64,000 nucleotides of DNA from Macrostomum lignano (GCA_002269645.1 NIVC01001770.1:175703-239702); one strand, 5' to 3'; numbered from the stretch's first letter, positions 4,624-53,100 are shown. Made by a program: numbers and translations. Notes: generated by a model from the sequence alone, not told the origin.

Positions 4624-4636
4624 GGTGACTTCAATG

Positions 4637-5963: not shown

Positions 5964-6091
5964 CTTTAATACGAGCGTAGCTGATCTACGAGCCATCCAT
6001 GCATATTAGACTGGTCCTGCGGTTTTACACGAGGCTGGTTTTCGTTAAAAGATGCATTATTGAGGAAGTCTTCAGGTTCTCACCTAAATCC

Positions 6092-11346: not shown

Positions 11347-11522
11347 TCAAAGTTCCGTCATCACAGGTCCTAAATTTGTCAGACTCGAAATCCCTACGTC
11401 AGTTGATGATCCCAAATCCTCATGCGAAGTTATCGATCCCAAATCCCTAGTCCTTAAGAATTACCAGATGATCCCTATAACAGATTCGTAGAATTCGAAG
11501 AAATAGCCAAGAAAGCAGGCAG

Positions 11523-32480: not shown

Positions 32481-34611
32481 TATAGATGCCGTAAATCAAT
32501 TCTGTAAATTAATATATCTTTCATTCATTGCATTAGATTCAAGCGTTGGGCACAGGAGCTATAGCCCGGGTTGAAACAGCCCATAAGTAGATTTACACAC
32601 ACAAATGTAGAGCATTGTAGAAACATCTTCCGCCAAGACCAAGCTGTCACTTTTTTAACAGCAGAACTGCCAAGGGGAAGTAGGAAATCCCCCCTCCGAC
32701 AATTTTTTTGCTGTGTCGGAACGGAGCAACGCAGGCACACGAAAGTTCAAGAACACGGGCTAACCTATTGTTGCGCACCTTCTCAAAAGAAAGATCAAGT
32801 CGCCCGTCCTCCGGACCGTCGAGATATTCTACGATTCTGCCAGGTCGGATTTTTTCCATAAGCGCTAGTGCATATCTGCAAGGCATATCAGCTCCAACTT
32901 CGTTAGTTACTGCCTTCACCCAGGCGTAGCTTCTGGACTTCAACAGGTGGCCACCAAGTGACTATGGACACGCTGCTGCAAATTTATCGAGTTCCGATGC
33001 ATGTTCAAGCCTCCATAGTGGGCAAATCACAACTGACTTCCCCAGTAAATTCCACCCACGCCCCCTGGTAAGTTCGACGTGCGGAAAATGGCTTTTTTGG
33101 TCTTCCTACTGTTCAGGAAACTTCTGCATTGCCGAAACCTCGCAACGCTTGTGCAATACGTTTGAAGCAGAGTATAGAATGGCCTAGACTGAGCGCGTGC
33201 GCGTGCAAGAAAATTTGCTCCGCAATTGGGAAAACAATGGCAATAAGTTGATTGACTGGCTTGCCTGCCTAATTCAGCTCCCGTAGGCTGTAACAATGCA
33301 TGTGTAGTTTAGCATCGCACGCGACGATGGCTCCACGTGAACTTCCGACGAACACCAAATTAGGCAAATTTCCCTATTGATTATTAGGAAAATGACGTCT
33401 ATTGTTATTGTTCTATTACTGTTATAAATTACTGGCAACAGGTGATACATATAATCCGCATATTTCACCAGCTAATAAATCTATTTATCTATTCAGTTGA
33501 TAAGCTCGTGATCCCTCTGACATGTAATAATGAGTTTACAACTATTTTATTCAGCTAAAAACCCTTCTAACCAACTAGGTGAGTCATTTTCAACACTAAC
33601 TAAAATCGATCAATCAAAATAACAAAATAACAAAGCCAGCTTCATACCCAGAAACAGAATATGAATCGTACTGCAGTGGAGACAAGCAGCACTAGTTTAT
33701 TCTAGTCACGGAGAGAATTACAGCGATTAACAATGAATCGGAACTCAGTAGTATTTCATTACCGTCCATTATTCATAGAAGACAGGCATCAATAAACACA
33801 ATATAATTTAGTCAGGAAGGCTTTATTTATAAATAAGGTCCAATTCAAATATGTAAGGTCAAATCAGTTAAGAATAGAGCCATTGTCAGCCATAAAAATA
33901 AAATTTCAATCACAAGTGTAGCAAAAGAGATTGGGAGTATTCAAGACAAATATTGGCTCGCAGAAGCAGCAATATAGTGTGCTGAACTATCGATAAACAG
34001 TGCTGTTTTTTGTTCTTAAACAAATCAATCTGAATTAAACTAAGTAAGCACGTATGAAGAAATGAAATTTAAAAGTTGAGTAACAGACAAGTAACCTGAA
34101 GGCGAGAGTTAATAGAATTCGAATTATGTCGGTACAGTCGTACTTTTTATTACGTCTAAAATTAAGGTACAATATGTACTTTCGTTTGTATGCTCACCCT
34201 AATATTTATTAAATTTATTTTAAAAAGAGACAAAAGATAGCTTGTACTACTTAAAATACTACCTACTTACTACTAACTAACCAGTGAATTGAAACTTGAC
34301 AAAGCTAATTAAAAACTCTCAAGCAAAATGAAAGATACAAACAAGATGAGGGCAAGCAGGATTATTCATAGGCCTTAGTAACCGTTTATAACAAAAAACA
34401 CCTTTGCAGGACAACAAAAATATAACGAGGAATCGAAATTAAGCAGCGACAAACAGGCCTGAATAAACAGTTGGAAATTCAAATTGATTAGATAATAGGT
34501 AATGCAGTTAGGAATGGTTGCTATAGAAATAGATTTAAGTTGGGCCATACTAATTTGATAATAGTTTTGTCCGTGTCCTAGTGTCTATGCGTTGTTGTTG
34601 TTAAGCAGTTG

Positions 34612-35650
34612 ACCCACCAGCAAGTCCTAATGGGGAATTAGTGACCCACCGGCAGATCCTAAAGGTGGAATTAGTGACCCACCGGCAGATCCTGATGGGG
34701 AATTAGTGACCCACCGGCAGATCCTGATGGGGAATTAGTGACCCACCGGTAGATCCTAATTGAATTAGTGACCCACCGGCAGATCCTGATGGGGAATTAG
34801 TGACCCACCGGCAGATCCTGATGGGGAATTAGTGACCCACCGGCAGATCCTGATGGGGAATTAGTGACCTACTGGCAGATCCTGATGGGGAATTAGTGAC
34901 CCACCGGCAGATCCTGATGGGGAATTAGTGACCCACCGGTAGATCCTAATTGAATTAGTGACCCACCGGCAGATCCTGATGGGGAATTAGTGACCCACCG
35001 GCAGATCCTGATGGGGAATTAGTGACCCACCGGCAGATTCTGATGGGGAATTAGTGACCCACCGGCAGATCCTGATGGGGAATTAGTGACCTACTGGCAG
35101 ATCCTGATGGGGAATTAGTGACCCACCGGCAGATCCTGATGGGGAATTAGTGACCCACCGGCAGATCCTGATGGGGAATTAGTGACCCACCGGCAGATCC
35201 TGATGGGGAATTAGTGACCCACCGGCAGATCCTGATGGGGAATTAGTGACCTACTGGCAGATCCTGATGGGGAATTAGTGACCCACCGGCAGATCCTGAT
35301 GGGGAATTAGTGACCCACCGGTAGATCCTAATTGAATTAGTGACCCACCGGCAGATCCTGATGGGGAATTAGTGACCCACCGGCAGATCCTGATGGGGAA
35401 TTAGTGACCCACCGGCAGATTCTGATGGGGAATTAGTGACCCACCGGCAGATCCTGATGGGGAATTAGTGACCTACTGGCAGATCCTGATGGGGAATTAG
35501 TGACCCACCGGCAGATCCTGATGGGGAATTAGTGACCCACCGGCAGATCCTGATGGGGAATTAGTGACCCACCGGCAGATTCTGATGGGGAATTAGTGAC
35601 TCACTAACAAATCCTAATGGGGGGGTCAGTGACCCACCGGCAGATCCTGA
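34612..35650. repeat. Minisatellite, 30-32-bp unit (gacccaccggcagatcctgatggggaattagt)
   Basis: Tandem periodicity downstream of the Rab1 stop. Confidence 0.95.
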
Positions 35651-35979
35651 TGGATTTCTGAAGGAGCTGAGAATGTTGGCATTGTTAAAGAATAGAAATG
35701 AACAAAGTTTAAAAAAATTCTTCTGTCTACAGGGTCCCACAACTGGACACAGAATTTATTGGACACAATAAATGTTTAGTATTGAGTTTGAGGCATTGAT
35801 AAATCAATAATTAATAAATAACAGTAAAAACACGCACATAGACCACCAGCTAAGGCGATTCTATTAAGAGTCAGACCAAAAATTAACTAGTGTGTGGAAT
35901 TTAAAATAAAAGAACACAACGCAGCAGTGTATTGCCATTGGCAACAAAAGCGTCCCTAAGTCAACTGCCTATTGTTTCC

Positions 35980-38900
35980 TTAGCAACTGCAACCTCCGCC
36001 GGACGATTTCACAGGCTGCGTGCCGGGACTCACCTTGATGGTCGGCTTCTGCTGCTGGGTGTTTCCCACCGGACCCATTCTAGACTTGATCTCCGCCGCC
36101 ATCGACATGAAAGCCTGCTCAACGTTGGTTGAGTTCTTGGCGCTGGTCTCTAGGAACACAATTCCGAGTTTGTCAGCGTACTCTTTGGCTGTGGCAAAGT
36201 CCACCACCTGCGGATCGGATATTGTCAGATACGGATTTGTCTTATAATACTGTTAGTAGCATAATAAGCATTTTTACAGATGGGAGGATGTGGTGCTAGT
36301 AGAGATGACGATGGCAGGCTGAGGTGCTGTCAGAAATGAAGATGGAAGGCTGAGGTGCTGTCAGAAATGAAGATGGGAGGCTGAGGTGCTGTCAGAAATG
36401 AAGATGGGAGGCTGGGGTGCTGTCAGAAATGAAGATGGAGGCTGAGGTGCTGTCAGAGATGATGACCGGAGGCTGAGGTGATCGCTCACCTTCTTAGCCG
36501 TCAGATCGCATTTGTTGCCAACAAGCAACTTGTTAACATTCTCGGAGGCGTAGCGGTCAATCTCCTGTAGCCAGTTCTTCACATTGTTGAAGGACTCTTG
36601 ATCCGTGACGTCGTACACTACGATGATGCCGTGGGCGCCGCGGTAGTAGGAAGAGGTGATGGTGCGGAAGCGCTCTTGGCCAGCCGTGTCCCAAATCTTC
36701 AACGTTGACAAGGTGAGAAATTTAGTTGGGGAGTTACGCTTCCGATTAAGTAAAAGATAGACTTTTACAAACTACACCAAGGCACCAAGGGCGCCAAGGC
36801 ACCAAGGGCGCCAAGGCACCAAGGGCGCCAAGGCACCAAGGGCGCCAAGGCACCAGGGGCGCCAAGGCACCAGGGGCGCCAAGGCACCAGGGGCGCCAAG
36901 GCACCAGGGGCGCCAAGGCACCAGGGGCGCCAAGGCACCAGGGGCGCCAAGGCACCAGGGGCGCCAAGGCACCAGGGGCGCCAAGGCACCGGGGCGCCAA
37001 GGCACCAGGGGCGCCAAGGCACCAGGGGCGCCAAGAACACAAGAAACATGAGTAAAGTTACATAACAACCAACCTGCAACTTGATGGTCTTGCCATCCAA
37101 TTCGATAGTACGGATCTTGAAGTCCACACCAATAGTGCTGATGTAACTCTCAGTGTAAGTGTCATCAGCAAAGCGCAACAACAAGCAGCTCTTGCCAACA
37201 CCAGAATCGCCAATTAGAAGAAGTTTGAACAGGTAGTCACTAAAATTTGGAGAGAGATACTTTGTACATTGCTAGCTCATGTGCATAACTAAATTCATGC
37301 AAATCTATTCAAAAAAGGACTAAAGGGCTACTAAATTCCTTAAAATAACAAAATGGATCAATGTCTTGGCCTGTATATAATTGGTGAGGATCATTATAAA
37401 AGTAAGAAAGGCTAACTTACTAATTAATGATGGTATAATTGATTATTATAATTATATGTGCAACTACTACTACTAAGGTTGTAGCCTAGTGGGGGTTGTA
37501 GCCTAGAGCATGAACTAAAAACTTGAAGGTTGAATGTTAATTCCTGATCCTACTAGAAAAATTTGTCTTTAAGCAAGGCACTTAACTCTACATTGCTTCA
37601 GTTAACTAAGTAGTAAAATGGGTATAGTATTAGCTAGGGTAATTGAAGGTATATGGCAACCCCCTGGTCCTCAGATTAAATAGCCATATATAGCCTGCAG
37701 ATGCACTATACAATAGCAGTGACTTAGCTGTCAGTTGCAAATATAGCCCAATTAGGGCAAGTATAATCTAAATATACTAAATTAAATACTAAACATATTA
37801 CTATTATGAGAAATAAAAGCAATATAAAAATAGCTTAGCTAAATTAGCTAATACATTCAAACTAGAATCTTGATATATATTACACATGATATAGAAACGT
37901 GGTCATATCCTAAAAGGTATATTGGTAGAAAAGATTTATTTCATATATTTGAGCAACCAAAACAATAAAAGAATTATAGAGTCATTATTTTAGCTGCTCA
38001 GGCAGAACTCATTAAGCAAATTATCCTGCTAGAATTCTGTCATGCCTATATCCATAACACCCTGCCAAGAGGCATGTACAACTGCTGCAGCAAGAAATTG
38101 CAGTTACAGATGTCACCTATACTGCAAGAACTGCCTGCTCAACTGCCATACCTTTAAATTGTTGCAGACTTAGAGGTTTTTCCACAACTCACATGTGAAC
38201 ATCTGCATTACTCTTGCTGTATTTGCCAGGTGGTTTCTGGCCTATCAAACAAGCAGTCTGGCAGTCTGGCACCCATATATGCCTAAGAGCAGGCGGGGCA
38301 ACCATAAACTGCCCTTACTGCCCCAAGGATGACCTGTAGAAACAACTTGAAGCCAGAGCAGAAACTCGGAGAAGCCCTGCACTAGGTGCCACTCACTTGT
38401 AGACAAAGGCCTGAGGCACAAGTGTAGCGTCTCAAGCACATTGCAGTATCTGTGCAAGCTTAGCCCTATATCAAAAGAGCATATCACTCATGACATGATG
38501 CGTGAAAAGCTAAGAGCAGCAGCAGCATCAGGACATAGATCAATGGCTTCTATTTCTAGCGCCACTGGTGGCCCACCAATGCAGCTAAGGCATGCAAATG
38601 ATTCAAATGAGCAGAGAGTGCTGAGGACCGAGACACTAGTAATGTTAAAGACCTCTCAATCTGAGTGACTGGCAAACAAACATGGCAGCCACAATCATCA
38701 GGCAGGCGGAGGGCAGTTGTAAGGCCGTGCAACCCAGACTGCACGCAGCTTTGGCAGCCACAAGCAGCATCACAGAGAGTTTTTTTGAGATGTGGCAGCT
38801 CAAATTCACTTAAAAGTCCTCAGGTGGTAGCTTTACTGATACCACAGGATGTTCTGTCATATGCCCCGATCTGCAAGGCCTGCTGAGCTTCATTTGCTCA

Positions 38901-41119
38901 AAGCGAGGTTTAGTGAGATCAATGTGAGATTGAAGCTGGGGATGGATGGAGGTGGTGGCTCACTAAAAATCTGCCTTAGTGTTGCCCCAATACTGCCTAC
39001 CAAACCACAGACAGAGTCAACACCTAAGAAGCTAAGCAGGGAGTCACCAATAAGCAACTTTGGCATAAAAAAACTGTTTATCATCACAATTGCTAAGGAT
39101 GTCCAGGAGAACTATGCAAATGTGCAAGAACTTTTAGATGAGCTAGACTTGACATCAATTAAGTTTATAGTCGCTTGCAACTTCAAGCTAGCCAACATCC
39201 TATGTGGCTTTCAAAGTCATGCTGCTCATCCTGGTCTTTACTGTGAAGGGCAGGTGCCATGGCAAGTTGCTGGTTCCATAAGAACCCTTAAATCCATTTG
39301 TTGGATAGCCATAGCATTCGAGGCTGCTAGTAACAGATCTCGTGCCACCACCAGAGCTACACATCATGCTTGGTGTGACCAACAAACTGCTCAATCAGCT
39401 CAACTCAGCTTGGGGCAATGACAAGGCATACAAGTGGGTATATTCAGCTAGAATCTGTTGCAAGCAGTATCATGGCAGGTGTCTAGAAGGCTTTGCATAT
39501 GTCAAATTGCTGCTAAAAGCTCAAGAGCTCAAGAGCAACTTGCTACCAAGGCTCTAGGGCTATGTGTCTGCTCTCATCATATTTGATGCTGTTCGCCAAG
39601 CATGTCTTAGGCAACAGCTAAAGAGCAACTTTTGCTAGAAGATTGGCAATGCTGAACTGAAGCTGGTGCCGACACCAAGATGCACACCCTTTTCCACTAT
39701 GTTCCAGAGTTGTGCAAGCAATTCAATTCAGGCCTTGGGACCTTTAGCAAGCAGGCAGTCGAGTCTGCACACAGTGACTTTTGTTTGACGTGGCAATGGT
39801 TTTGCAGGCCTTTGAGGCATGTGCAGTACGCAGAATGCCTGCTGCTTGCAGTTGTTAGCTACAATTCTAGCCATATTTGATGTTAAGCATTTTTATGCCT
39901 GCAAAGATTTCTAGGATTTAGCTTGTATACTTAATATCTATGTGCACTTTATTCTATACTGACATTAGCAATAATAAGTGCATGATGTATAATATTAATA
40001 CTAATATAGTTGCATGTTCCTCTAATGATAAATAATAATATTGTAACTATGAGCTATAATAACATTAATATTATCAATGGGTTTGGCCTTAAATGCTTAT
40101 CATATTATATATAATCTATAGTCTAGATCATGCTAGGTGCATGCCTGAACAAAAATTGGATAATTATAAATGCATGCCAAAAATGTAATATATGCACATT
40201 CTTAAAAATAATCTAGTGTTGCAACAATAAATGACCTTTTTATGTTGTGGCAATAAATGACCTTTTTAAATTGCATAATAGACCCTTATTAGCAGATAAT
40301 TTGGTTGATTTTTATGCTTTTTTGGTGATACTATACTATTTATAGTAGAAAATTGGGTTATCTTCAAGTTTTGTTCGTTTAATTCCAACACCCACCCCCC
40401 ACCACCCTTGAATAGAGGGCGAAAATAATTCCGGAAATAATTTAACGAACGAAACTTGAAGATTGCCGAAAATTGATACATACAAAGATTTGTTTAAATG
40501 CTTTTTTATGAGCTTGAGAAAACTGGAAAGCTTAAAATTTATGCTTATAAATAAACTTTTTTCATCTTTTTTTACTTCACAGATAGATCTTACACATAAT
40601 TCTATAAAGTGCATACCAGGTATACATGCATACTATTTTCTCAGGAGTGATAAATGCCAACTATGCATGCCTAATTATGGTATGCAAGGCCAATGCATGC
40701 CTGAATGTTTGGGCATATACTACATGAACCTAAGTTTGGCATGTAATTTGCAATAAATATAAAATTCCTATTACCATTTTTGACAAGGCAATTGCCAATT
40801 AGATTTGTCTAACACTGTTTTTGAAATCTGCATGGGTCTTTGGGGCTGGGAAAAGCATCAGTTTCTTTGGGAAGACAAAGACAAAAACAAAGACATTTAG
40901 CAGACAAAATTACTGTACATTTTCAGATAAATGAGTGGCAGACAAACTGGCAACAGACAAAACGACCAATAAACTTTAAAATGCATAGAGATAGTAATAA
41001 TATAAAATAAAATTGAGAATGGAATGGCATATTCCTAGATTATAATATTATTATTAAAAAATCTGTTAATTTTATAAAAAAATTAGAGTTCAGGCATAAA
41101 CTTACTATTCTGGTGTCAT
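35980..41119 (-). CDS. RAB1A: Ras-related protein Rab-1, 204 aa, 4 coding exons
   Basis: Exons (minus): 41119-41106 (ATG ACA CCA GAA TA), 37239-37074, 36696-36490, 36207-35980; GT-AG and phase-consistent. [89 protein letters not shown] prenylation end. Confidence 0.96.
36310..36480. repeat. ~31-bp tandem repeat in Rab1 intron 3 (gaggctgaggtgctgtcagaaatgaagatgg)
   Basis: ~5 copies adjacent to the exon 3 donor. Confidence 0.85.
36775..37035. repeat. 17-bp minisatellite in Rab1 intron 2 (ggcaccaggggcgccaa)
   Basis: ~15 copies. Confidence 0.95.
37477..37768 (+). mobile_element. CORE-type tRNA SINE (family B), heavily C>T/G>A-mutated copy in Rab1 intron 1
   Basis: Colinear with the reverse complements of 46970-47250 and 51549-51824; core tctttaagcaaggcacttaactctacattgcttcagtt...gtaaaatggg; no CpG left. 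Confidence 0.85.
38030..39880 (+). pseudogene. Decayed DDE transposase of the RAG1/Transib/Chapaev-related class, antisense in Rab1 intron 1
   Basis: Ordered motifs [15 protein letters not shown](N<D)[33 protein letters not shown]...[22 protein letters not shown](K<E)QAVESAH..F...W; frameshift near 39340, TAG stops at 39555 and ~39635; upstream CPYC zinc-finger-like motif. TIRs not located. Confidence 0.8.
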
Positions 41120-41369
41120 CTTATAAAAGTGGCTGGCTGTGCCTGCGAAGATGATGAATTATATGAAGAACTGCGGTAATAGGAAAGTCTGAGCTCCTAC
41201 AACTTATAATATAAGTTGGAAAAATCTTTGTTGGGTAGGCCTCTGATCTTAAAAAATACTATACTAGCGATCACACAACAGCAGACCTAAAGGAACAGTG
41301 GCACTTAATACTATTATATTACAGAAGCTGAAGCCTAAAGGTAGGTAAGCTTTCTTGGAATTTATTATT

Positions 41370-41600
41370 CGTAGAGCAAGCGGGGTGCGAGTCGGTTTTA
41401 CAAAGTATCCAATTTTTATAGTGATAAATAATTATTTTATAAAAAAGAAAATATTAGTCTGTATTCGGCATTAATCTGTGTATAATTTTAACTATGCTGT
41501 TTTAACCAACTAAATTTTTCGGTGAGCGATATAATTACTGCGGTCTGCGCGTTGCCGCTGTTTGATGAGTCGCGAGGAGTAGGCCTAGTGTGTGTGTGTG
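41370..41600. promoter_or_regulatory. Putative CpG-retaining bidirectional promoter between Rab1 and eIF2B-delta
   Basis: ~12 CpG in ~200 bp by eye between two nearly CpG-free domains; head-to-head housekeeping genes. Confidence 0.55.
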
Positions 41601-43979
41601 TAGTGGTTGTTAGCAATTTCCATACTTTTTAGCTTTTTACCTGGTGAAGTTTATATTTTTTCTTAATTTCGCAAATCCAGAGTATACCCTTGCATTTGTC
41701 AGTGTACTCCACTTAGGCAAGTTGAGACAAGGAAGTCTTAGAAGAAGTTAAATTAAGTTAACCAAAAATGACAAAAGCCAAAAACTAAGAAAGAAAGATG
41801 GAAGAAAAAGAAAAGAGCAACATAACAAAAGTAAAAATAATGAAGCAAAAGAAAAGCAAGTTGCAAAAAATGCAAATTAAGTTGCTTAAGCAATTAGGTA
41901 AGTTGCAACAAGAGCAGCTAAGTTGCAATAAAGATCAGGCAAATTGCAACAAGAGCAACTAAGTTGAAAAAAGGATTAGATGAGTTGCAAAAGAACTGGC
42001 CTTTAGTTAACAGGCCCTTCTCTTACTTCAAATGAGAAGGAATAGAAGATTAGGGCCTAGAGATGAGCAAACAGGGAAGAGATAAGAGATGCAATAAGGG
42101 AAAAGATAGAAAAAAGAGAAAAACTATGTGAGGAAAGAGAGATAAGAGAGAAGAAAGGATAAAAAGGTTATGAGAGCAGAGATAAGAGATTTAAGGTTAG
42201 AGAGAGGAATAAGATGAAAATAAAGTGGAGAAAGAAGAGATAAAAGTGTAGAAAAGAGAAAGAAAAGATAGGGCCTGAGAAAAAAAAGAAAAGGAAAAAG
42301 AAAAGAAGATAGATGAAAAGATTGAGAAGAGGAGATAAGTTTTAAAGGCCTCAAATCTTAATTTATCATGTATTTATTCCTGTTTTTATTAGTTTTCTTT
42401 TCTAGACATTCGTGAATCATGAGTCATGACTTATGTAGCTAGTATACTCACTATATTATATTATATTAAGACAATTTATAAATGACTTCATAGGCTGCCA
42501 TCAGATGGCATACTGATAAGCTATTATAAAAACAGAAGTAGGCCCTAATCTGTATATAGTACTAATTAGATGGCAAAGAATTTAGCCTATAAAAATGGTT
42601 AAAGTTAGGCCTAGGCCTGACTTTTATCTAGATAATTATGTTTATTTGCTTAACTTTTTTTCATAAGTAAGTCACATTTTTGGTTACAAAGTAGGCCAAG
42701 TTGCATAGGCCTAGCTAGTGTAAATTAAGGGGGGGGTTGCACATGTATGCTATTGTTAATATATTTATGATTTTATAACTTAACTTTTTAAGGCTGTTTC
42801 TAATTTTTAGTTAATACCAAAGCCATATCAAGGCTCAATGGCTGATGACTCTGAAATTCAACTTAATGTTTAATTCTTTAATTTTTATTAGTTATACTAG
42901 GCTTATAGAGCCATTTTCTATATCCAATTAAATTCTATCTAGTTATAGAGCTATGCTTATACAATAGAACTCCTTTATTCATTAGAATATTTATAAAGTC
43001 TTCAGATTAAAACTCTTTTAGAATAACTTTAAGTATAAATATTAGAATGAGACCTAATCTAACTCTAAAACCTAATAAGGAATAAGCCTAAGTAAGTATC
43101 TCAAAGTGTAATTTTAATGACTTACCTTTTACTAGTAGCATTTTTATTTTAAATTATGTTTTCTAGAGTTCCACCATAACTAATTTTTTGTAAATCAATA
43201 CCTAAACTAATTTTTCCTATGGCCTATATCTGGACCATATCTATATCTCTAGCTATTTAGTTTCTCATAATAAGGACTTAAAAGCTCCTAGTGCATTGAA
43301 AATAAAAAATCATTTTAACTTTCCCCTTGCTATCCAAATTACACAATGTGTACATGGCATTGAAAATCTTGGTTGCTTGAATATCAAACCCTAGGGACTT
43401 AAAAGTTCCCCTTATAAAAGCTTTGAAACTGGCAAAATTCATTTCTCAATAGTTTTGATTTCAATTTTTTATTTTCTCTTTGTTTAGTTTCAATCTAAAT
43501 ACAAGTTTACTTATAGCTTAAAAATAATACCACTAAGGCATAGTAAAAAATAAGGAGATTCTTAATGATATTATATGATTTTTATATGCACCTAAACTTT
43601 ATAAAGATCTATTAAAAACTATTAAAGACCTATTGCAATTAATTATGTAAATTTTACCAACCAACAACTACCTAAAAACCAAGTCATAGAAATTTAATAG
43701 TAGCACTTCAAGGGTAACAAGATCCAGTATTCCATATAGGAAAAATTAACAATCTAGATTGCATAATTATCTTGTTACTAGTCAAATAAAATAGAAATAA
43801 ATTTGATATGTTTTTAAATGTCTTTTAAATTAATATTAAATGATCATGTGCTAGGTTTGTATACTCTTAGAAGTCTAGTCAACACATTTATATAACTTGT
43901 AGAAGTATATGAATTCTCTTAGCTATGAAAGTCATCAATGCATCTCAATCAACAATGATGTTCATGAGCTGAGTTAAAA

Positions 43980-45392
43980 ATGTTGCCTACCGATTCAAAG
44001 CGGAGAAGTGGCAAAGAGAAGCAGCAAAAAGAGAAGCAGTCCCTCCCAGCATCTTCTGCTCAAGAGGGCAAAAGTGCTGCTCAACTTCGAGCTGAGCGCC
44101 GGGAACTTCAGGAACGACAGAGAGCCGCCAAGTTGCAAAAGCAGCAGGAACAGAAGCAAGCTGGCGGCGGCAAGGGCGGCTCTAAAACTTCAAATCCGTC
44201 TAACAAAGCTGAAGCTGGCAGTAAAAAGTCTGCAGAACAAAAGCAGTCAGCGCCCATTCCAACTTCAGCAGACAAAAAGGCACAATCGAGTAAGTTGGCT
44301 CCACCAGGAGACACCCACCAGCAGCAGCAGCAGGCGGCCAACAAGAAAAAGTCGCCACCACCTCAGCAGCAACAGCAGCCTGCTGACTCCTCAGTAAAGT
44401 CGCTGCCAAGCTTCTTCCGCCACCTCAAACCTCCTATGGATGCTGAACAGATAACTAGCAGTGTGTATAACGAACAGTTTGCCCAGAGCCAGATTGAAGC
44501 CGCATTCGTTCAGTTGTCCCTGATGGTGGCGCACGAACAGCTGCAGGGTCCCGCCGCCAGGTGCTTAGGCTTGGCCCGCGCTCTTCGCCAGCTGCTCTGC
44601 ACTGTGCCTGTGCAGGATCTGCCTCGCCTTATCAAACCAAAGCTTGATCCGAATATGCGACTGCTTCGATCGGCTAAGCCTCCCACAGTGCTTGAGTCAT
44701 ATCTTGAGCAGCGCCTAGCTAATTGGGTGCAATCAGCTGGCAGTTCGGCGGAGAACTCTGACCACTGGCTTGTAGACCGGATGAATGAGTTTGTTATTGA
44801 ACAGATTGAAAAGGCTCGGGTCACAATGCGGGCCAGTCTAAAATCGAAGATTAACAACTTGGACTGCATTATGCTTTACAAGCCGTCCAGCTTAATATTC
44901 GAATGCCTAGAGGACATTGTGTCTGAAGGAACGAAAATGCCAGACGTTAGAATAATTTTATTGGATTCGCCGCCCAGCTGGGAAGGCCAGGCCTTTCTAA
45001 GAAGGCTACAGGGGCACAGGCTGCTGTCAAAGTGTCCAGTCCGCTACGCGATGCTGTCTGCCGCGCCCAGTCTGTTGTCGGACACCAGCAAGCTGGTGCT
45101 GGAAGGCCAGGCTCTGACAGCTAATGGCAACGTGCTAGCGCCAGTCGGCACCGCCTACCTGGCCAATGTTGCTTGGTCGCATCGGATTCCCTGTCTAGTA
45201 TTGTGCCACGCCTGCCAGACCTGGGACCAGGTGCTAATTGACTCCGTATCCTACAATGAGCTGGGTCGAGTTAGTAGCGATAGCCAATTGTGCAATATTC
45301 AGTACGACTTGACGCCAGGCGATCTTGTCACAGCGCTAATTACGGAGCGCGGAATTCTGCCCTGCACTGGGTCGCCGGTTCCGTCTCACTGA
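43980..45392 (+). CDS. EIF2B4: Translation initiation factor eIF-2B subunit delta, single-exon CDS, ~470 aa
   Basis: Basic low-complexity N-terminus with KSAAQLRAERRELQERQRAAK; GPAARCLGL; IF-2B domain LEGQALTANGNVLAPVGTAYLA..HRIPCLV..NEL..YDLTPGDLVTALITERGILPC. The C-terminus may be shifted by a 1-nt deletion at ~45381. Confidence 0.9.
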   Translation: MLPTDSKRRSGKEKQQKEKQSLPASSAQEGKSAAQLRAERRELQERQRAAKLQKQQEQKQAGGGKGGSKTSNPSNKAEAGSKKSAEQKQSAPIPTSADKKAQSSKLAPPGDTHQQQQQAANKKKSPPPQQQQQPADSSVKSLPSFFRHLKPPMDAEQITSSVYNEQFAQSQIEAAFVQLSLMVAHEQLQGPAARCLGLARALRQLLCTVPVQDLPRLIKPKLDPNMRLLRSAKPPTVLESYLEQRLANWVQSAGSSAENSDHWLVDRMNEFVIEQIEKARVTMRASLKSKINNLDCIMLYKPSSLIFECLEDIVSEGTKMPDVRIILLDSPPSWEGQAFLRRLQGHRLLSKCPVRYAMLSAAPSLLSDTSKLVLEGQALTANGNVLAPVGTAYLANVAWSHRIPCLVLCHACQTWDQVLIDSVSYNELGRVSSDSQLCNIQYDLTPGDLVTALITERGILPCTGSPVPSH

Positions 45393-46969
45393 GGTTGAAC
45401 TAATTATTTTTTAACTGTCATTCGTCTTATTAAGTTATTTTGCATCATTATCCCATGGCAAGTATATTAGCGCAGGTAAACTTGCTAATCTACATGTGTT
45501 GTTGGTAACCGATGTGAATAATTGGCCTATGCTTCAGCCTTTAATTAATTATTACGCAAAAAATGCTATTTTTCAGTCGTTCTGTGTTTGCTTATTTTTT
45601 GGATGTGGGGAATGAATTTCTGTAATTTTACTGTTTGTTGCGCAAAGGAATCGATGAGTTTTAACTTCTCTCTGCACCTGATTCAGCCAATCACAGACTC
45701 TGAGAGGCCACGTATCCCGCTAAGTGATGAAATGAGCTTACAGATTGCTGGACTTCTAACTAACTGTCTTAGTGATAAGCTACAGCTATTCCCTATAACC
45801 ATCGCATGTTATCGTTGCATAAGATTATATGGTTATTATTATTATTTATATCTAGTATGCGTTTCAGTCAGTGTAATTGCTTGCAATTTAATTGATGCAA
45901 AAAATTAAAAGCAAATAAAATTTCTACACACTGAGCTGACGAAACTGACGGATTGGAAAACAGTTTGTTCTTGAATAGGATATTAATGTGTCACATGTGT
46001 TCAAGCGTACGTGTATATGTTATTTTACTTCTAGATTAGAGTTGTAGAGGATAAGTTATCTAGGAGTTACGAGCGAAAGCGCATTAATTATCTACTTGCT
46101 CTACTTTTAGTAGTCTTATTGCAAGCACAAATTAATTTATTTTAAATTTTCTTCGAGAAACAATTCGTAATTAGACGAGACTTAGAAGCTTTTTTTAATT
46201 TTTTTAATTAAAGCAAATCCTTAACCATCTAATCAACCACTGTCGGTCATTGTTTCTCTTCCTAAAATCGGTTTACTGTTACGTGATCGCGTGGCAACTG
46301 CTCAGAAATTGCGCTCAAAAGAAGTAACAATTTCTCGCCAGGGTTTGCAACTTTTTCTTCTGTCGAGTGTAGCAAAATAAGTTCTCGTTTTGGTTCCGTT
46401 TGACGTCTAGCAGCTAGCTCGTACTCGTGAGTTTATCTTCCTTTGAAATTCAAAAGTTTCGAAGCTGTGCTGCTGTGTACTGAAATGAGAATTATTGATT
46501 TTTGAGCGACAAGAAGTCGCTCAAAACCCCTGTTAATTTTTTCCCGTCCTAAGCATATTTTTAGCTCGCATAAATAAGCTGTCTCGAGTCGAGTCCTGTT
46601 CTTTAAGCTTAGCAGGTACCTAACAGATAGTCTCCTGTCTCAATGTTGCGCAGTGCTTTCATTTCTGTTGCCTTTTAATTGCTCAGAAAGCTGTTTAATC
46701 CGTAATTTGATATGCATGCCTCTATGTGCAGGGCGGCAGAGAAAGATCGTGACATTGCATGCGCTCGCGTTTCGATCGGATAGCTGCTATTAGTTGTCCT
46801 GCAAATTGTTGCCTGCCAGCTGCAACTGTGCTAGTTGGCATCATGTAATTTTTAGTGTTTTATAAGCTAGATTAAAACCGTAAACGTATGAGAGTTTTAA
46901 TTGCGACCCTGGAGGGGGTTTATCTGATTTTTCTCAAATCAAAATTAACATATAATGATTATAATTGAT

Positions 46970-47250
46970 TACACCTGCCCTAATTAGGCCAGATGTGCAA
47001 CCGACAGCTCAGCCGCAGCTATTGCGTGGCGCATCTGAAAACTGCGTACGGCAGTTCAGTCCAAGGGGGGTCGCCACACACCCTCAATTACCCCAGCTAA
47101 TGCTGGCACCCATTTTACAGCTGGGTGAACTTAAGCAATGCAGAGTTTAGTGTCTTGCTCAAAGACATATTGTTCCAGTGGAATCGGAAATCGAACCCCC
47201 GACCTTCAAGTCGCGATCTTCCGACGCTCTAACCTCTAGGCTACATCCCC
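46970..47250 (-). mobile_element. CORE-type tRNA-derived SINE (family B), intact copy
   Basis: Minus head ggggatgTAGCCTAGAGG (A box), GGTTCGATTTC (B-box-like); CORE-like segment tctttgagcaagacactaaactctgcattgc...cacccagctgtaaaatggg; ATT-rich tail. Confidence 0.85.
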
Positions 47251-48696
47251 TCTATTGTAGGAGTCTACTTAATCTGCTGTCTACAGAGAGTTCACTTGTT
47301 GCTATTGCTATATTTAGGAATTGGCTCGTCAATCTATCCTTCTCTAACCCGGCCGGAGCCAGGCTACAATCTGGACAGGAAAATTATAGCGCAGTCTTCG
47401 TGTATTCTTTGGTAAATTGCTGCTTATATAATATCCTATATCGTTATGATAAATGGTGTTTTTAGCAAAGAATGTATGGCTTAATTGCGACCCTGTCGGG
47501 GAAACTAAGTGCAGCGGTTTCTTCTAATTAATTGTTCCCAGAGGGCATACAGTAGAATCAAAAAAGCCTAATGATTTGATTGCTGACCGCGTTGTTCTGC
47601 CTGGTCATCTTTTAAAGAAAACCCCCCGCGGTTCCAAGCGCCTGCAGTCTTTCAGCCAAGGCTTCCAGAGTTGAAACCATTAAGTAAATCATCTAGCAGA
47701 TGCTTCATTTGATATGTTTTGGTGACTGGTAGGGTTTTCATGGAGCCCCGGGGGCATTTAGATAAATAAAATGCCGATTCCAGGGGCTTGCTGTCTATTG
47801 CATTTCTCGCCTAAAGATATCACATTTAATGGGTGAGCAACACACTGGAGTCCTACGACAAGCAAACTGCATACATAATACCAGCGGAGATTCAGACGAA
47901 TCTGTCCGTAAAAAATGAATGGTTGCGGCCCATAAGTATTACCATGATCATTATCATTATCTATCAGTTCAGCTGCACATTATCTAGTGCATGACTCGAA
48001 TGTGTTGCGCTAAAGTCTTCAAAATCGGCGATTATAGCGAGTCATCAATGGCCACTCATTCAGCGTTTTGTCGACTGCCTACTGACTGACGCTGGCGGCG
48101 ACTCGTGGCTTCTTTTAAGAAATCTTTCGAATACACAGCACCCATCAAGATGCTAATTTCGAATGCTGACATATTTTAACTGCAAACAAAATATTCATAT
48201 ATTTAGACATCCTTAAACATCGGCTAATCAGTTTCATCTTTCATGCATAGACCAAGCCATTGCTGTTTGAGTTTAGTCAAGCAGGGCCCGACAGTAGCCT
48301 ATTGTCTTTGAAATTAATGGGTAACAGGTGGTAAACATTCCCCAAAAGGGCTATACTTGCTTTCCGTGTGCAGCTCAGAAAAGAATGCTTCACTGCGGCG
48401 CTGCCTATTTTGCTGAAGTGAAGGGCGTAATTATGCCAGACTATGGCTGCTGTGAGCATGCAGGCAGTCATTCGTTGACATCTGCAGGACCTCTTATGAC
48501 TAACGTCGCTTCCCTGTCTCTGCAATAGTCTAACCTAGCTCGAATCCCGTGCAAGGCAACAGCAGAAATGATTGAAGAGTGTGGATCCCTGCTTTTCTAC
48601 CTCAGCGGACGGGTATTAGGACTGTGACTTCTCCTTTTCAGAGTTGCTTCAAAAGGAATAAAAGTTATACTGTTACAGCTGCAGAAAGTTCAGCCT

Positions 48697-48862
48697 TAGG
48701 GGTGTTCGGGTCGGCCATTTTTTCGGGGTTCGGGGTTTACCCCGAACCCGGTACCCCTACCCCGAACCCCGAACCCGACCCGGAACACCTACCCCGAACC
48801 CCGAACCCGGTACCAAAACCCGACCCGAAACCCGACCCGACCCCGAACCCCGAACACCCCTA
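48697..48862. mobile_element. hAT MITE, TAGGGGTG-type TIR, 166 bp, internal (cccgaac)n
   Basis: TIRs taggggtgttcggg / cccgaacacccta; perfect 8-bp TSD ttcagcct (48689-96, 48863-70). Confidence 0.9.
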
Positions 48863-50165: not shown

Positions 50166-53100
50166 ATGAGCAACGAAAACAGTCTCGACACTGGCAACGA
50201 GGCTGGAAGGTGAACCTAAAAAATTCAATACATTTCATTTTCAAACAACCGTTCTAATTGATTTTCAATGATGCTAATTATGTCAAACCTTTTGCAGCGA
50301 GGCGTCAACTTCCACATCGGCAACTGGGCAGGATGTTGATCAGCCGCCGCTCCAGCTGCCGCAACAGCGTATACAGCAACAGCAGCAGATTCAACAACAA
50401 GAACAACAGCAAGAACAGCAGCACCGGCCAAGCCTGGTCCTGCTTGAACCAGACGAAGACTCGGAATGTTTTTACTCGTTTAACGATGAAACCGACAGGG
50501 AGAGTCTGCGCGAACGAGAGGACGTTCTAACATCGCCAGCCGTGTCCCCGGTGCCCTGGGCGCGGGAGATGTCGCCTGCGGCTGGGGGCAGGCGGACTGG
50601 TGCGTTCTGGCGCGGATGGGCACCTTGCATCGCTGTTTAGCATTTTCAATTGCCAAGCATGTTTACTTCTAGCTCAGTATTGACTTTTGAGTGACGCAAC
50701 TTGCGCCACGCGACGCAGAGTTGGGCCGGGTGAGGAGGGATTGGGAAGAGCGGCGGGCGAATATTGGATGGATTGAAGCTTCCGCCCGGTTTTCATTGTT
50801 TTCTAAAGCATTTTTTGACAGTGACACTGCTCACTGGGAAGCTACTCGACCCTCGCAAATTGTGTGATTTTCATTGGAGGCCGGGTTTCGTTGCTATGAA
50901 TCAGTGAGCTTCCGAAATGCTGTTAATGCTATTAGGCTTGGTTTAAGAGCTTCATAAACAAAAAAACGTTCATTAATTACAAAGCAAGTATCAGCTGTTC
51001 CATAGTGCGCATAACTGGCAGTGCCAAATTATTAATATCTTTACATGTGCATTCTAATAATAAGGAAAAGGTGTTTAGCGTCGAGTGAGTTATATGCTAG
51101 AGTGGTGTTGGCCTTGCTCAATACATTATGCAGAATACTTAGTGAGCTTTTAATATGCTTCAATTGCAGCACTGAACCAAGCGGAGTCAACAGTGCCGCT
51201 TCAGGTCAACTCCGGCCGCCAGTTTGTCACCCTTCAGGTGCCCAGCCTGCGGATTCCAGTGAGTGACTACATTACTTTCCAGGTATGGTTTTTGATTTAA
51301 AACAACTCAAACTACGACAGGCTTAAGGAAATTTTCAGTTTGAATTTCACATCTTCAATCAATTCTACTTACCATAAGTAGGTCGTCGAGCGCATTGAAA
51401 CCTACAGAACTCTGAAAGAGGCACGTATGTGCAGTTCGATGGCACTGTTGCGTTGGTCTATCGTATTTTCCTACCTTAATAATACCAATAGTAATAACTT
51501 TTTGTACATGGGATGACTATAATTATCATTCTTATTATTAATTAATAACACCTGCACCAAATGGGCCAGACGTGCAACCGACAGCTCAGCCGCAGCTATT
51601 GCGTGGCGCCTTTGAAGGCTGCGTACGGCTGCTCAGTCCAAGGACTGGAGCATCACCACATATGCCCTGAATACCCCAACTAATGCTGGCACCCATTTTA
51701 CAGCTGGGTGAACTGAGGCAACGCAGAGTTAAGTGTAATACAAATTTTTCCAATGGGATCGGGAATCGAACCCCCGACCCTCAAGTCGTGATTCCGACTT
51801 TCTAACCACTAGACTACAACCCCCTCCACTAGGCTGCAACCCCTTCCATCAGGCTACAACCCTCTCCACTAGGCTACAACCCCCTCCACTAGGCTACAAC
51901 CCCCACCATCAGGCTACAACCCCTCCACAAGGCTACAACCCCCACCATCAAGCTACAACCCTCTCCACTAGGCTACAACCCCTCCACTAGGCTACAACCC
52001 CCTCCATCAGGCTAGCTCGTACAACCCCCTCCATCAGGCTAGCTCGTACAACCCCCTCCATCAGGCTAGCTCGTACAACCCCCTCCATCAGGCTAGCTCG
52101 TACAACCCCTCCAGGCTACAACCCCCCCATCAGGCTACAACCCCCTCCACTAGGCTGCAACCCCTTCCATCAGGCTACAACCCTCTCCACTAGGCTACAA
52201 CCCCCTCCACTAGACTACAACCCCCACCATCAGGCTACAACCCCCTCCACAAGGCTACAACCCCCACCATCAAGCTACAACCCTCTCCACTAGGCTACAA
52301 CCCCTCCACTAGGCTACAACCCCTCCATCAGGCTAGCTCGTACAACCCCCTCCATCAGGCTAGCTCGTACAACCCCCTCCATCAGGCTAGCTCGTACAAC
52401 CCCTCCAGGCTACAACCCCCACCATCAGGCTACAACCCCCTCCACTAGGCTACAACTCCCACCATCAGGCTACAACCCTCTCCACTAGGCTACAACCCCC
52501 ACCATCAGGCTACAACCCTCTCCACTAGGCTACAACCCCCTCCACTAGGCTACAACCCCCACCATCAGGCTACAACCCTCTCCACTAGGTTACAACCCTC
52601 TCCACTGGCTCCAACCCCCTCCATCAGGCTAGCTCGTACAACCCCCTCCATCAGTTTACAACCCCCACCATCAGGCTACAACCCCCTCCACTAGGCTACA
52701 ACTCCCACCATCAGGCTACAACCCTCTCCACTAGGCTACAACCCCCTCCACTAGGCTACAACCCCCACCATCAGGCTACAACCCTCTCCACTGAGCTACA
52801 ACCCCCTCCATAAGGCTAGCTCGTACAACCCCCTCCATAAGGCTAGCTCGTACAACCCCCTCCATCAGGTTACAACCCCCACCATCAGGCTACTTACCCC
52901 CTCCATCAGGCTAGCTCGTACAACCCCCTCCATCAGGTAACAACCCCACCATCAGGCTACTACCCCCTCCATCAGGCTAGCTCGTACAACTCCTTCATCA
53001 GGTTAAAACCCCCACCATCAGGCTACAACCCCCTCCACTAGGCTACAACCCCCACCATCAGGCTACAACCCTCTCCACTAGGCTACAACCAACCCCCTCC

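What the first reader, a model, noticed from the sequence alone, without database searches (positions are those of the whole stretch)
37245..43990. RIP-like CpG and CpA>TpA hypermutation domains flanking a divergent housekeeping promoter in an animal
Seen, by manual count: 41672-43990 has a single CpG in ~2.3 kb; 38041-38640 has ~6 CpG in 600 bp at roughly 45-50% GC, versus 11 CpG in just 180 bp of the adjacent eIF2B-delta ORF (44401-44580). The domain is TpA-rich, and the only CpG-rich break is the ~200-bp promoter at 41370-41600. Embedded repeats show CpG loss plus CpA>TpA and TpG>TpA changes, so both strands are affected. Same-family SINE copies elsewhere in the window are untouched, so targeting is positional (5' part of transcription units), not repeat-induced. 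Established: CpG decay follows 5mC deamination; CpA>TpA conversion is the hallmark of fungal RIP, and DNMT3 enzymes can methylate CpA. Inference: dense germline methylation (CpG plus CpA), or a deaminase, is confined to the first kilobases of broadly expressed genes and doubles as a TE-destroying zone. I know of no description of this in flatworms.
Basis: partly seen in the sequence, partly recalled or inferred. Interest (0 to 1): 0.85.

Follow-up and report, generated by a model that had tools for sequence, protein, structure and literature searches.

The report
CpG-stripped 5' introns in a flatworm
The non-coding DNA on both sides of a shared promoter of two housekeeping genes in the flatworm Macrostomum lignano has lost nearly all its CpG sites, which looks like the mutational scar of local germline DNA methylation and not a fungal RIP-like process.

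Summary
The window is Macrostomum lignano (assembly GCA_002269645.1).

The domain is Rab1 intron 1 (37240-41105, minus strand) plus 2.4 kb between a CpG island and the eIF2B-delta ATG. It holds a decayed tRNA-type SINE, a decayed DNA-transposon relic and a young MITE-like insert.

In 142 kb of M. lignano DNA, CpG o/e is bimodal, and the domain sits in the low mode (median 0.12 against 0.77). Of seven independent SINE insertions of similar age, three kept 0-1 CpG and four kept 63-100% of theirs. The stripped copies also carry 2.4-fold more non-CpG C>T, ordered CpG > CpA > CpT/CpC.

RIP indices fail and match AT-matched DNA. A young four-copy transposon shows no C>T excess. Exons are not depleted.

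Best reading: the footprint of a mosaic germline methylation compartment. M. lignano keeps DNMT1 and DNMT3. The compartment is confined to 5' non-coding DNA.

One point is unresolved. The transposon relic is 6.4% diverged between two paralogous loci that otherwise differ by about 0.5%, and the polarised subset of changes is almost all GC>AT.

Moderate interest; new member of a known kind.

The parts
35983..36204 (-). Rab1 last coding exon (…VDFATAKEY…GGGCSC stop)
   Evidence: ORF list; tblastn of the spliced 204-aa Rab1; six-frame translation
36487..36696 (-). Rab1 exon 3 ([10 protein letters not shown]…LTAKKV)
37074..37239 (-). Rab1 exon 2 ([17 protein letters not shown]…KTIKLQ). It holds 4 CpGs, the last before the depleted zone.
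37240..41105 (-). Rab1 intron 1, 3.87 kb. The acceptor AG is at 37241-37240 and the donor GTAAGT at 41105-41100, read on the minus strand. CpG o/e 0.19, GC 38%.
   Evidence: Sequence read directly; statistics. The same tiny-exon-1 and long-intron-1 structure occurs in the two other Rab1 paralog families.
37477..37776 (+). Decayed tRNA-derived SINE. 0 of 10 consensus CpGs are kept and 24% of positions differ from the family consensus.
   Evidence: Self-BLAST; alignments; spectrum
37734..40191 (+). Relic of a DNA transposon. ORF homology to the M. lignano 683-aa protein P0011 runs over 38062-39877, with many stops and frameshifts. CpG o/e 0.19, CpA+TpG o/e 1.54. The same interval is the block that is 6.4% diverged from the paralogous locus L004.
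   Evidence: Protein search; tblastn; alignment to L004; polarisation and context
40348..40467 (.). Young MITE-like insertion, 120 bp with 32-nt terminal inverted repeats, absent from the paralog L004. It carries 6 of the 7 CpGs of the promoter-proximal part of the intron (39891-41106).
   Evidence: Indel list; inverted repeat I1; CpG positions
41106..41119 (-). Rab1 exon 1, coding part (ATG ACA CCA GAA TA; ATG at 41119-41117)
   Evidence: Read from the sequence. The joined reading frame gives MTPEYDYLFK…, which is 100% identical over 98% of its length to the annotated P0015.
41370..41600 (.). CpG-containing island (13 CpG, o/e 1.73) between the two divergent genes. It is the presumed shared promoter.
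   Evidence: The promoter function is inferred from its position only.
41601..43979 (+). CpG-free AT-rich stretch (2 CpG, o/e 0.04, GC 29%) between the island and the eIF2B-delta ATG. It is either a 5'-UTR intron or outron, or upstream DNA. It includes a purine-rich low-complexity tract at about 41700-42340.
   Evidence: No ORF or Rfam hit.
43980..45392 (+). eIF2B-delta ORF (Pfam IF-2B, E = 1e-25). Not CpG-depleted: o/e 0.70, and NCG makes up 21% of four-fold codons.
46930..47260 (-). Intergenic SINE copy that keeps 13/13 CpGs (control)
51534..51823 (-). Intergenic SINE copy that keeps 11/13 CpGs (control). Its 5' 20-mer is expanded into the 2.4-kb minisatellite at 51806-54231.

Best explanation
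The domain is non-coding DNA on both sides of the shared Rab1/eIF2B-delta promoter in Macrostomum lignano. It consists of Rab1 intron 1 plus the 2.4 kb that precede the eIF2B-delta start codon.

It belongs to a discrete, kilobase-scale genomic compartment in which cytosines have been lost by C>T transition far faster than elsewhere. CpG is hit most (essentially to extinction), CpA next, and CpT and CpC least. The most likely cause (inferred) is long-term germline 5-methylcytosine in this compartment followed by spontaneous deamination. M. lignano is one of the flatworms that kept DNMT1 and DNMT3. The promoter island and the coding exons lie outside the compartment.

Anything neutral that sits in the compartment (a SINE, a transposon relic) is eroded toward AT-rich, CpG-free sequence as a by-product. 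A recent insert (the 120-bp MITE-like element) still has its CpGs.

Shown here: the compartment, its boundaries, its bimodality, and the context-ordered C>T excess. Inferred: that methylation is the cause, and that 5' introns of expressed genes are the rule for its placement.
For: Organism and locus: the eIF2B-delta product maps to GCA_002269645.1 contig NIVC01001770.1.

Counts and boundaries. The last CpG before the zone is at 37208, in exon 2. The next are at 37898 and onward. On the other side the CpGs are at 42411 and then 43991, which is 12 bp into the ORF.

Bimodality: CpG o/e across 353 non-tandem windows has a minor mode at 0-0.1. AT-matched controls have median 0.64.

All-or-none CpG retention in seven independent SINE insertions: 0/10, 1/13 and 0/13 against 13/13, 11/13, 10/12 and 5/8. 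Age proxies are similar between the groups. A/T-site transitions are 0.056 against 0.074 and transversions 0.090 against 0.069, both non-significant.

Non-CpG C>T is 0.177 against 0.075 (p = 1e-5), and CpA is 0.24 against 0.14 for CpT and CpC (p = 0.02).

Transposon relic: the relic lineage shows 49 GC>AT against 5 AT>GC transitions relative to two outgroups. Of 51 polarised differences between the two paralogous relic copies, 47 are GC>AT transitions. They fall on both strands and in both lineages. Rates are CpG 0.32 > CpA 0.15 > CpT 0.10 > CpC 0.05. CpA+TpG excess is 1.54.

The same kind of low-CpG stretch occurs in intron 1 of the two other Rab1 paralog families and upstream of the ATGs of GalK, RPS4 and a cadherin.

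Literature: DNMT1 and DNMT3 are retained and 5mC is present at low level in M. lignano (PMC11292947, PMC9246332, PMC10658182).
Against: No methylation data were available, so the link to 5mC is inference.

Canonical invertebrate gene-body methylation also depletes exons, and here it does not. The eIF2B-delta ORF has CpG o/e 0.70 with 21% NCG codons (against 33% G-ending in control families). Rab1 exons are at about 0.83, and the RPS4 gene region is at or above 1.0.

The AT-rich parts lack the TpG/CpA excess expected from simple CpG decay (0.92). Additional decay of TpG/CpA or great age must be assumed.

The positional rule rests on a few loci chosen through Rab1 paralogs, in a sparsely annotated assembly.

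Adult 5mC levels are reported as low.
Confidence: 0.6

Rival explanations
1. One reading: a RIP-like or deaminase-driven hypermutation converts CpA to TpA and CpG to TpG, is confined to the first kilobases of broadly expressed genes, and acts as a TE-destroying zone.
For: CpA>TpA is significantly enriched in the domain SINE copy (17/48 against 11/90, p = 0.002), and modestly enriched when the three stripped copies are pooled (p = 0.02). Changes fall on both strands. ACA is the most mutated non-CpG trinucleotide in the relic (0.28). The transposon relic is 6.4% diverged between two loci that otherwise differ by about 0.5%, and in the outgroup-polarised 720-bp subset 47 of 51 differences are GC>AT.
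Against: The (CpA+TpG)/(ApC+GpT) index is 1.2-1.9 and the composite RIP index is negative. TpA indices equal those of AT-matched DNA with normal CpG.

CpG, not CpA, is the top target. There is no CpA preference in the relic against its outgroups (0.19 against 0.14 and 0.12), nor in two of the three stripped SINEs.

There are no strand-coordinated runs such as RIP rounds or APOBEC editing would leave (runs tests p = 0.95 and 0.67). CpC and TpC contexts are the least hit.

Four 99.9%-identical copies of an active 3.3-kb transposon show 1 C>T among 8 variable sites.
Confidence: 0.08
2. TE-targeted silencing rather than a gene-linked compartment. Methylation (for example guided by piRNAs) is aimed at the transposon relic and spreads into neighbouring DNA. 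Low-CpG stretches would then be old TE graveyards that merely accumulate in first introns and 5' flanks.
For: The block of high, GC>AT-biased divergence (37734-40191) coincides with the transposon relic: ORF homology covers 38062-39877, and the active relative carries 620-670 bp of non-coding ends. The adjacent AT-rich intron differs by only 0.7%. The active family itself has a lowish CpG o/e of 0.49.
Against: SINE copies of one family are stripped or intact according to place, not sequence. The 2.4 kb upstream of eIF2B-delta is the most depleted part (o/e 0.04) and has no recognisable TE homology. Transversions, including A<->T, are also 5-7 times higher in the relic block than in the flanks. 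This points to an older history of that block rather than targeted deamination.
Confidence: 0.15
3. No methylation is involved. The domain is simply the oldest neutral DNA in the window, or sits in a regional mutation and fixation regime that drives GC>AT. Candidates are transcription- or R-loop-associated cytosine deamination next to a strong promoter, or absence of GC-biased gene conversion.
For: The domain flanks a bidirectional promoter. Non-CpG C>T is raised 2.4-fold while A/T>G/C is slightly lower, as weaker gBGC would give. The AT-rich parts have no TpG/CpA excess. The young MITE-like insert and the homogenised minisatellites keep their CpGs.
Against: A composition-neutral C>T pressure does not lower CpG o/e to 0.02-0.05. 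SINE copies of similar age are all-or-none for CpG. There is no consistent strand asymmetry relative to transcription: 15 C>T against 24 G>A in the SINE, 25 against 24 in the relic, and GC and AT skews do not flip at the promoter. AT-rich windows with normal CpG are common (23 against 14 low-CpG ones in non-overlapping windows).
Confidence: 0.15

Closest known systems
Mosaic (fractional) invertebrate DNA methylation and its CpG o/e footprint, as in Ciona intestinalis and Apis mellifera (PMC3827831, PMC2975444). My recollection of Suzuki et al. 2007 (Genome Res) and Simmen et al. 1999 (Science) is that TEs are methylated or not according to whether they lie inside methylated transcription units.
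   Same: Bimodal CpG o/e. Kilobase-scale compartments linked to constitutively expressed genes. An undepleted promoter. The state of a repeat copy is decided by its location, not its family. The organism has DNMT1 and DNMT3.
   Different: Here the coding exons and the eIF2B-delta and RPS4 gene bodies are not depleted, and the scar is confined to the first intron or the stretch upstream of the ATG. There is an accompanying 2.4-fold excess of non-CpG C>T (CpA > CpT/CpC) and strong local AT enrichment. No methylome is available to confirm any of this.
Repeat-induced point mutation (RIP) of Neurospora and other fungi
   Same: GC>AT transitions on both strands that destroy transposon reading frames. 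TpA/ApT is above 0.89 in the AT-rich parts.
   Different: The target order is CpG > CpA > CpT > CpC. The (CpA+TpG)/(ApC+GpT) index is well above 1.03. A young multi-copy transposon and other SINE copies are untouched. Unique DNA is affected as much as repeats.
Vertebrate-type CpG depletion with non-methylated CpG-island promoters (PMC8286816)
   Same: A short CpG-containing island at a bidirectional housekeeping promoter, flanked by DNA with CpG o/e of 0.02-0.2.
   Different: In M. lignano most of the surrounding genome, including intergenic DNA, keeps CpG o/e of 0.7-0.9. The depleted state is the exception, not the background.
AID/APOBEC editing footprints in retroelements
   Same: Clusters of C>T and G>A changes in mobile-element copies.
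   Different: There are no strand-coordinated runs and no TpC or CpC preference. A DNA transposon relic and unique DNA are affected. The changes accumulate in both paralogous copies independently.

Membership tests
RIP (repeat-induced point mutation) | CpA is the strongly preferred target (CpA >> CpT > CpG > CpC) | tested here: not met
   Relic block: CpG 0.32 > CpA 0.15 > CpT 0.10 > CpC 0.05. Stripped SINEs: CpG about 0.55, CpA 0.24, CpT and CpC 0.14.
RIP (repeat-induced point mutation) | Compositional indices: TpA/ApT > 0.89 and (CpA+TpG)/(ApC+GpT) < 1.03, with a positive composite index | tested here: not met
   The second index is 1.21-1.91 in every sub-block. The composite index median is -0.04. 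The indices do not differ from AT-matched DNA with normal CpG (p = 0.12-0.39).
RIP (repeat-induced point mutation) | Triggered by sequence duplication, so all sizeable repeated copies are mutated | tested here: not met
   Four copies of a 3,343-bp transposon are 99.85-99.94% identical, with 1 C>T among 8 variable sites. Four of seven SINE insertions keep their CpGs.
RIP (repeat-induced point mutation) | Depends on a RID-type cytosine methyltransferase homologue in a premeiotic stage | not testable with these tools
   The M. lignano genome could not be searched as a whole.
Mosaic invertebrate CpG methylation footprint | The organism encodes DNMT1 and DNMT3 and has genomic 5mC | not tested
   Taken from the literature only: PMC11292947, PMC9246332 and PMC10658182, all citing Wasik et al. 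2015.
Mosaic invertebrate CpG methylation footprint | Bimodal CpG o/e with sharply bounded low-CpG compartments | tested here: met
   Histogram of 353 non-tandem windows. CpG positions at the domain edges. All-or-none CpG retention in SINE copies.
Mosaic invertebrate CpG methylation footprint | Lost CpGs reappear as a TpG/CpA excess | tested here: inconclusive
   Met in the transposon relic (TpG+CpA o/e 1.54) and in direct CpG>TpG/CpA changes in the SINE and relic alignments. Not met in the AT-rich unique parts (0.92).
Mosaic invertebrate CpG methylation footprint | The depleted compartment covers the transcribed gene body, including exons | tested here: not met
   eIF2B-delta ORF: o/e 0.70, NCG 21% against 33% in control families. 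Rab1 exons about 0.83. RPS4 gene region 1.0-1.2.
Mosaic invertebrate CpG methylation footprint | 5mC is actually present on the compartment in germline cells | not testable with these tools
   No methylome or raw-read data were accessible.
AID/APOBEC-type DNA editing | Strand-coordinated clusters and a TpC or CpC motif preference | tested here: not met
   Runs tests: 44 observed against 37.6 expected, and 35 against 33.8. TCA 0.14, TCT 0.11, and CpC is the lowest.

The most novel reading that the evidence does not exclude
M. lignano has a germline cytosine-modification or deamination regime that hits CpG and, at lower rate, CpA > CpT > CpC. It is confined to kilobase compartments in first introns, outrons and 5' flanks, and spares exons. 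It drives local AT enrichment.

In its strongest form, the regime acts in situ on an intronic transposon relic about 15 times faster than on its flanks: 6.4% GC>AT-biased divergence since a duplication that left the neighbouring DNA about 99.5% identical. That would be a TE-focused, methylation-linked hypermutation in an animal, RIP-like in outcome but not in mechanism.
Probability: 0.15. Interest if true: 0.7.

Novelty: new member of a known kind. Interest (0 to 1): 0.38.

Why it matters
[quoted passage not shown] M. lignano is one of the flatworms that kept DNMT1 and DNMT3.

The sequence already contains a sharp, bimodal mutational scar. It predicts where germline 5mC should be: first introns and the stretch upstream of the ATG of genes such as Rab1, eIF2B-delta, RPS4 and GalK. 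It also predicts where 5mC should not be: promoter islands, exons and most intergenic DNA.

If a methylome confirms this, M. lignano would show a placement of methylation unlike classic gene-body methylation, together with a measurable non-CpG component. It would also link methylation, local AT enrichment and passive erosion of intronic transposons.

If the methylome does not confirm it, a methylation-independent, CpG-specific mutational compartment would need explaining.

Tried and rejected
1. An exact look-up of the 470-aa ORF found nothing. The annotated 462-aa product P0007 did map.

2. Pfam on the relic ORFs gave nothing meaningful. Pfam on the intact relatives P0001, P0002 and P0011 also gave nothing.

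I used the third protein search instead.

4. Wasik et al. 2015 could not be read, so the methylation facts come second-hand from three reviews and papers.

5. Rfam and tRNA scans of the region found nothing real. The SINE head is too decayed or too derived for ARAGORN.

6. The three-way alignment of L006, L007 and L008 was too badly aligned to use. The apparent hot blocks in the L009, L010 and L011 alignment turned out to be minisatellites.

7. Majority-rule polarisation in three-copy alignments is ambiguous, because the copies are mosaics: in each block a different copy is the odd one out. I did not rely on it.

8. I looked for terminal inverted repeats of the relic and found none convincing.

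9. I considered APOBEC-type editing, transcription-coupled deamination and pure AT drift. Each fails on context, on strand symmetry, or on the all-or-none CpG retention.

10. I considered whether the 6.4% block proves in-situ hypermutation. I rejected it as proof. Transversions, including A<->T, are also 5-7 times higher there, and mosaic blocks of 3-5% divergence are common between paralogous copies elsewhere.


Full report
**Source and gene map**

The eIF2B-delta product of the window (P0007) is encoded on contig NIVC01001770.1 of assembly GCA_002269645.1. Its cluster mates and the transposon homologues are annotated as Macrostomum lignano.

Rab1 lies on the minus strand. Reading the sequence together with tblastn and translations gives this structure:
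- exon 1, coding part: 41106-41119 (ATG at 41119-41117, donor GTAAGT at 41105-41100)
- intron 1: 37240-41105
- exon 2: 37074-37239
- exon 3: about 36487-36696
- last exon: about 35983-36204

The joined 204-aa protein is 100% identical over 98% of its length to the annotated P0015.

eIF2B-delta is a single ORF, 43980-45392 on the plus strand (Pfam IF-2B). The claimed domain is therefore Rab1 intron 1, then about 260 bp around Rab1 exon 1, then a 230-bp CpG-containing island, then 2.4 kb of non-coding DNA up to the eIF2B-delta ATG. Whether that 2.4 kb is a 5'-UTR intron or outron cannot be told without RNA data.

**The observation**

| Interval | CpG observed | o/e |
|---|---|---|
| 41672-43990 | 1 (49 expected) | 0.02 |
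| 38041-38640 | 6 | 0.18 |
| 44401-44580 | 11 | 0.75 |
| 41370-41600 (island) | 13 | 1.73 |
| 37245-43990 (whole domain) | 45 (204 expected) | 0.22 |

- The flanks of the window are at 0.58 and 0.70, and the neighbouring non-coding 45393-51500 is at 0.86.
- The edges are sharp. CpGs stop at 37208 in exon 2 and resume at 43991, which is 12 bp into the ORF.
- The paralogous locus L004 has the same depletion (o/e 0.19).

**Is it more than AT-richness?**

I masked tandem repeats, which make up 29% of the window. I then scored 353 overlapping 500-bp windows in 142 kb of non-redundant M. lignano DNA (the window, L002, L006 and L009).

- The distribution is bimodal, with a main mode at 0.7-0.9 and a minor mode at 0-0.1.
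- Domain windows have median 0.12 against 0.77 outside (p = 6e-11).
- AT-matched outside windows (GC < 0.36) have median 0.64, so low GC alone does not give the effect.
- The other low-mode windows are in intron 1 of both other Rab1 paralog families (L006 about 17-20 kb, L009 about 11-12.5 kb).
- They are also found just upstream of the start codons of GalK and RPS4 (L006), and 1-2 kb upstream of the start codon of a cadherin gene (L012).
- Several other genes lack such a stretch: MVD, a p450, and ADK.
- The sample is small, it was reached through Rab1 paralogs, and the annotation is sparse. The 5' rule is therefore suggestive, not established.

**Embedded repeats**

- 37477-37776 is a tRNA-derived SINE.
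- 38062-39877 is the frameshifted remnant of the ORF of a DNA transposon. Its intact relative in M. lignano is a 3,343-bp element with 370-bp terminal inverted repeats and a 683-aa ORF.
- 40348-40467 is a 120-bp insert with 32-nt inverted termini. It is absent from the paralog L004 and holds 6 of the 7 CpGs of the promoter-proximal part of the intron, 39891-41106.

**SINE test**

I found seven independent insertions of the SINE in the fetched loci.

| Group | Copies and location | Consensus CpGs kept |
|---|---|---|
| Stripped | Rab1 intron 1 (window); intron 1 of a Rab1 paralog (L009); 113-341 bp upstream of the GalK ATG (L006) | 0/10, 0/13, 1/13 |
| Intact | four copies in intergenic or 3' positions | 13/13, 11/13, 10/12, 5/8 |

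- Age proxies that do not depend on cytosine are similar in the two groups. A/T-site transitions are 0.056 against 0.074 (p = 0.26) and transversions 0.090 against 0.069 (p = 0.10).
- One uniform CpG decay rate cannot give 85-100% retention in some copies and 0-8% in others of similar age. Two regimes therefore exist, and position decides which one applies.
- The stripped copies also have 2.4-fold more non-CpG C>T (0.177 against 0.075, p = 1e-5).
- They show a modest CpA lean (0.24 against 0.14, p = 0.02). This is driven mainly by the domain copy (17/48 against 11/90, p = 0.002).

**Transposon relic**

- Against two outgroups (an intact homologue on a metagenome contig, L003, and the M. lignano copy in L002), the relic lineage shows 49 GC>AT transitions, 5 AT>GC transitions and 21 transversions.
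- Its C>T rates are CpG 0.35, CpA 0.19, CpT 0.14 and CpC 0.12.
- CpA+TpG are in excess (o/e 1.54), as expected when CpG decays to TpG or CpA.

**RIP test**

- (CpA+TpG)/(ApC+GpT) is 1.21-1.91 in all sub-blocks, and the composite index is negative.
- TpA o/e, TpA/ApT and the CpA index do not differ from AT-matched DNA with normal CpG (p = 0.12-0.39).
- The context order is CpG > CpA > CpT > CpC.
- Four copies of the active transposon are 99.85-99.94% identical. They show 8 variable sites, of which one is C>T.
- C>T and G>A changes are interspersed, with no strand-coordinated runs. This argues against RIP rounds and against APOBEC-type editing.
- On its defining features, the RIP label therefore fails.

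**Not classic gene-body methylation either**

- The eIF2B-delta ORF has CpG o/e 0.70. It uses NCG for 21% of four-fold Ser, Pro, Thr and Ala codons, against 33% G-ending in control families.
- Rab1 exons are at about 0.83. The exon coordinates used in that call were slightly off, so this value is approximate.
- The RPS4 gene region is at 1.0-1.2.
- The scar is confined to 5' non-coding DNA.

**An unresolved sub-finding**

The window and L004 are paralogous copies. Together with L005, over 44642-51790, the three copies show only 28 singleton differences in 7.1 kb.

| Interval (window against L004) | Divergence |
|---|---|
| 40418-43979 | 0.74% |
| eIF2B-delta ORF | 0.21% |
| 45393-51790 | 0.42% |
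| 37534-40417 | 6.4% (149 transitions, 28 transversions) |

- At fine scale the hot block is 37734-40191, which is the transposon relic.
- Polarised with outgroups, 47 of 51 differences are GC>AT transitions. They split 27 and 24 between the two lineages and are randomly interspersed by lineage and by strand.
- This could be in-situ, TE-focused hypermutation.
- However, transversions are also about 6.7-fold higher in the block than in the flanks, and A<->T changes about 5-fold.
- The other triplicated locus shows that paralogous copies are mosaics. In successive 1-2 kb blocks a different copy is 3-5% diverged.
- A small patch of about 9% divergence also exists in normal-CpG DNA at 34000-34271.
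- I therefore favour an older history of this block, through mosaic homogenisation or ectopic conversion limited to the element. On that reading the spectrum shows the long-term GC>AT-biased decay of GC-rich DNA in this compartment.
- In-situ hypermutation and assembly effects are not excluded.

**Explanation and comparison**

- The best-supported reading is a footprint of a mosaic germline methylation compartment. 5mC deamination removes CpG, there is a weaker non-CpG component, and local AT enrichment follows.
- M. lignano retains DNMT1 and DNMT3 and has low-level 5mC. Its genomic methylation pattern is described as unknown for free-living flatworms (PMC11292947, PMC9246332, PMC10658182).
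- The closest known system is the fractional methylation of Ciona and honeybee transcription units (PMC3827831, PMC2975444).
- It differs here in sparing exons and in the non-CpG signal.
- Methylation itself was not observed here, so this step is inference.

**Verdict**

It is a new member of a known kind, with a testable twist. Interest is moderate.

Noticed in passing
window 37734-40191, against L004 about 3800-6330: The transposon relic is 6.4% diverged (149 transitions, 28 transversions) between two paralogous loci whose flanks differ by 0.2-0.7%. In the outgroup-polarised 720-bp subset, 47 of 51 differences are GC>AT. The changes are randomly interspersed between the two lineages and the two strands.
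   Followed up: partly
window 40348-40467: A 120-bp MITE-like insertion with 32-nt terminal inverted repeats. It is present in the window and absent from the paralog L004, and it carries 6 intact CpGs inside an otherwise CpG-poor intron.
   Followed up: partly
L012 9332-12674; also L013, L014 and L002 8871-12211: An apparently active 3,343-bp DNA transposon with about 370-bp terminal inverted repeats and a 683-aa ORF that has no Pfam match. Four copies on different contigs are 99.85-99.94% identical. A distant relative (P0005) carries a THAP domain.
   Followed up: partly
window 51806-54231, next to the SINE at 51534-51823; also 37477-37506: The 20-nt motif at the SINE 5' end (CCACTAGGCTACAACCCCCT and variants) is expanded into a 2.4-kb minisatellite next to one copy. 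The array has CpG o/e of only about 0.2 because the unit lacks CpG.
   Followed up: no
whole window (for example 978-2899, 4760-5854, 10351-13361, 15077-16048, 17237-18163, 20785-22321, 27799-28700, 34610-35653, 36278-36480, 36777-37035): About 29% of the window is minisatellite arrays with 14-45-bp units. Some fill Rab1 introns 2 and 3 and its 3' flank. Array copy number differs between the paralogous loci.
   Followed up: no
L009, L010 and L011 three-way alignment (for example L009 9279-10267, 11200-12300, 12765-14265): The paralogous triplets are mosaics. In successive 1-2 kb blocks two copies are identical and a different third copy is 3-5% diverged. This suggests frequent gene conversion or recombination among the copies.
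   Followed up: partly
window 34000-34271, against L004: A short patch with 24 differences in about 270 bp (about 9%), in DNA with normal CpG content and otherwise at least 99% identical.
   Followed up: no
window 16088-16336, 16851-17216, 22652-22939 (minus strand): ORF fragments that look like protein-kinase exons (…[16 protein letters not shown]…, …[13 protein letters not shown]…). This suggests a large kinase gene whose introns are filled with minisatellites. Not annotated in the look-ups.
   Followed up: no
L003 (JGI metagenome 3300040801, contig Ga0450804_2706734): An environmental contig encodes an intact 188-aa homologue of the relic ORF. It is 72% identical at the nucleotide level and much richer in GC and CpG. 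It served as an outgroup, and its organism is unknown.
   Followed up: partly
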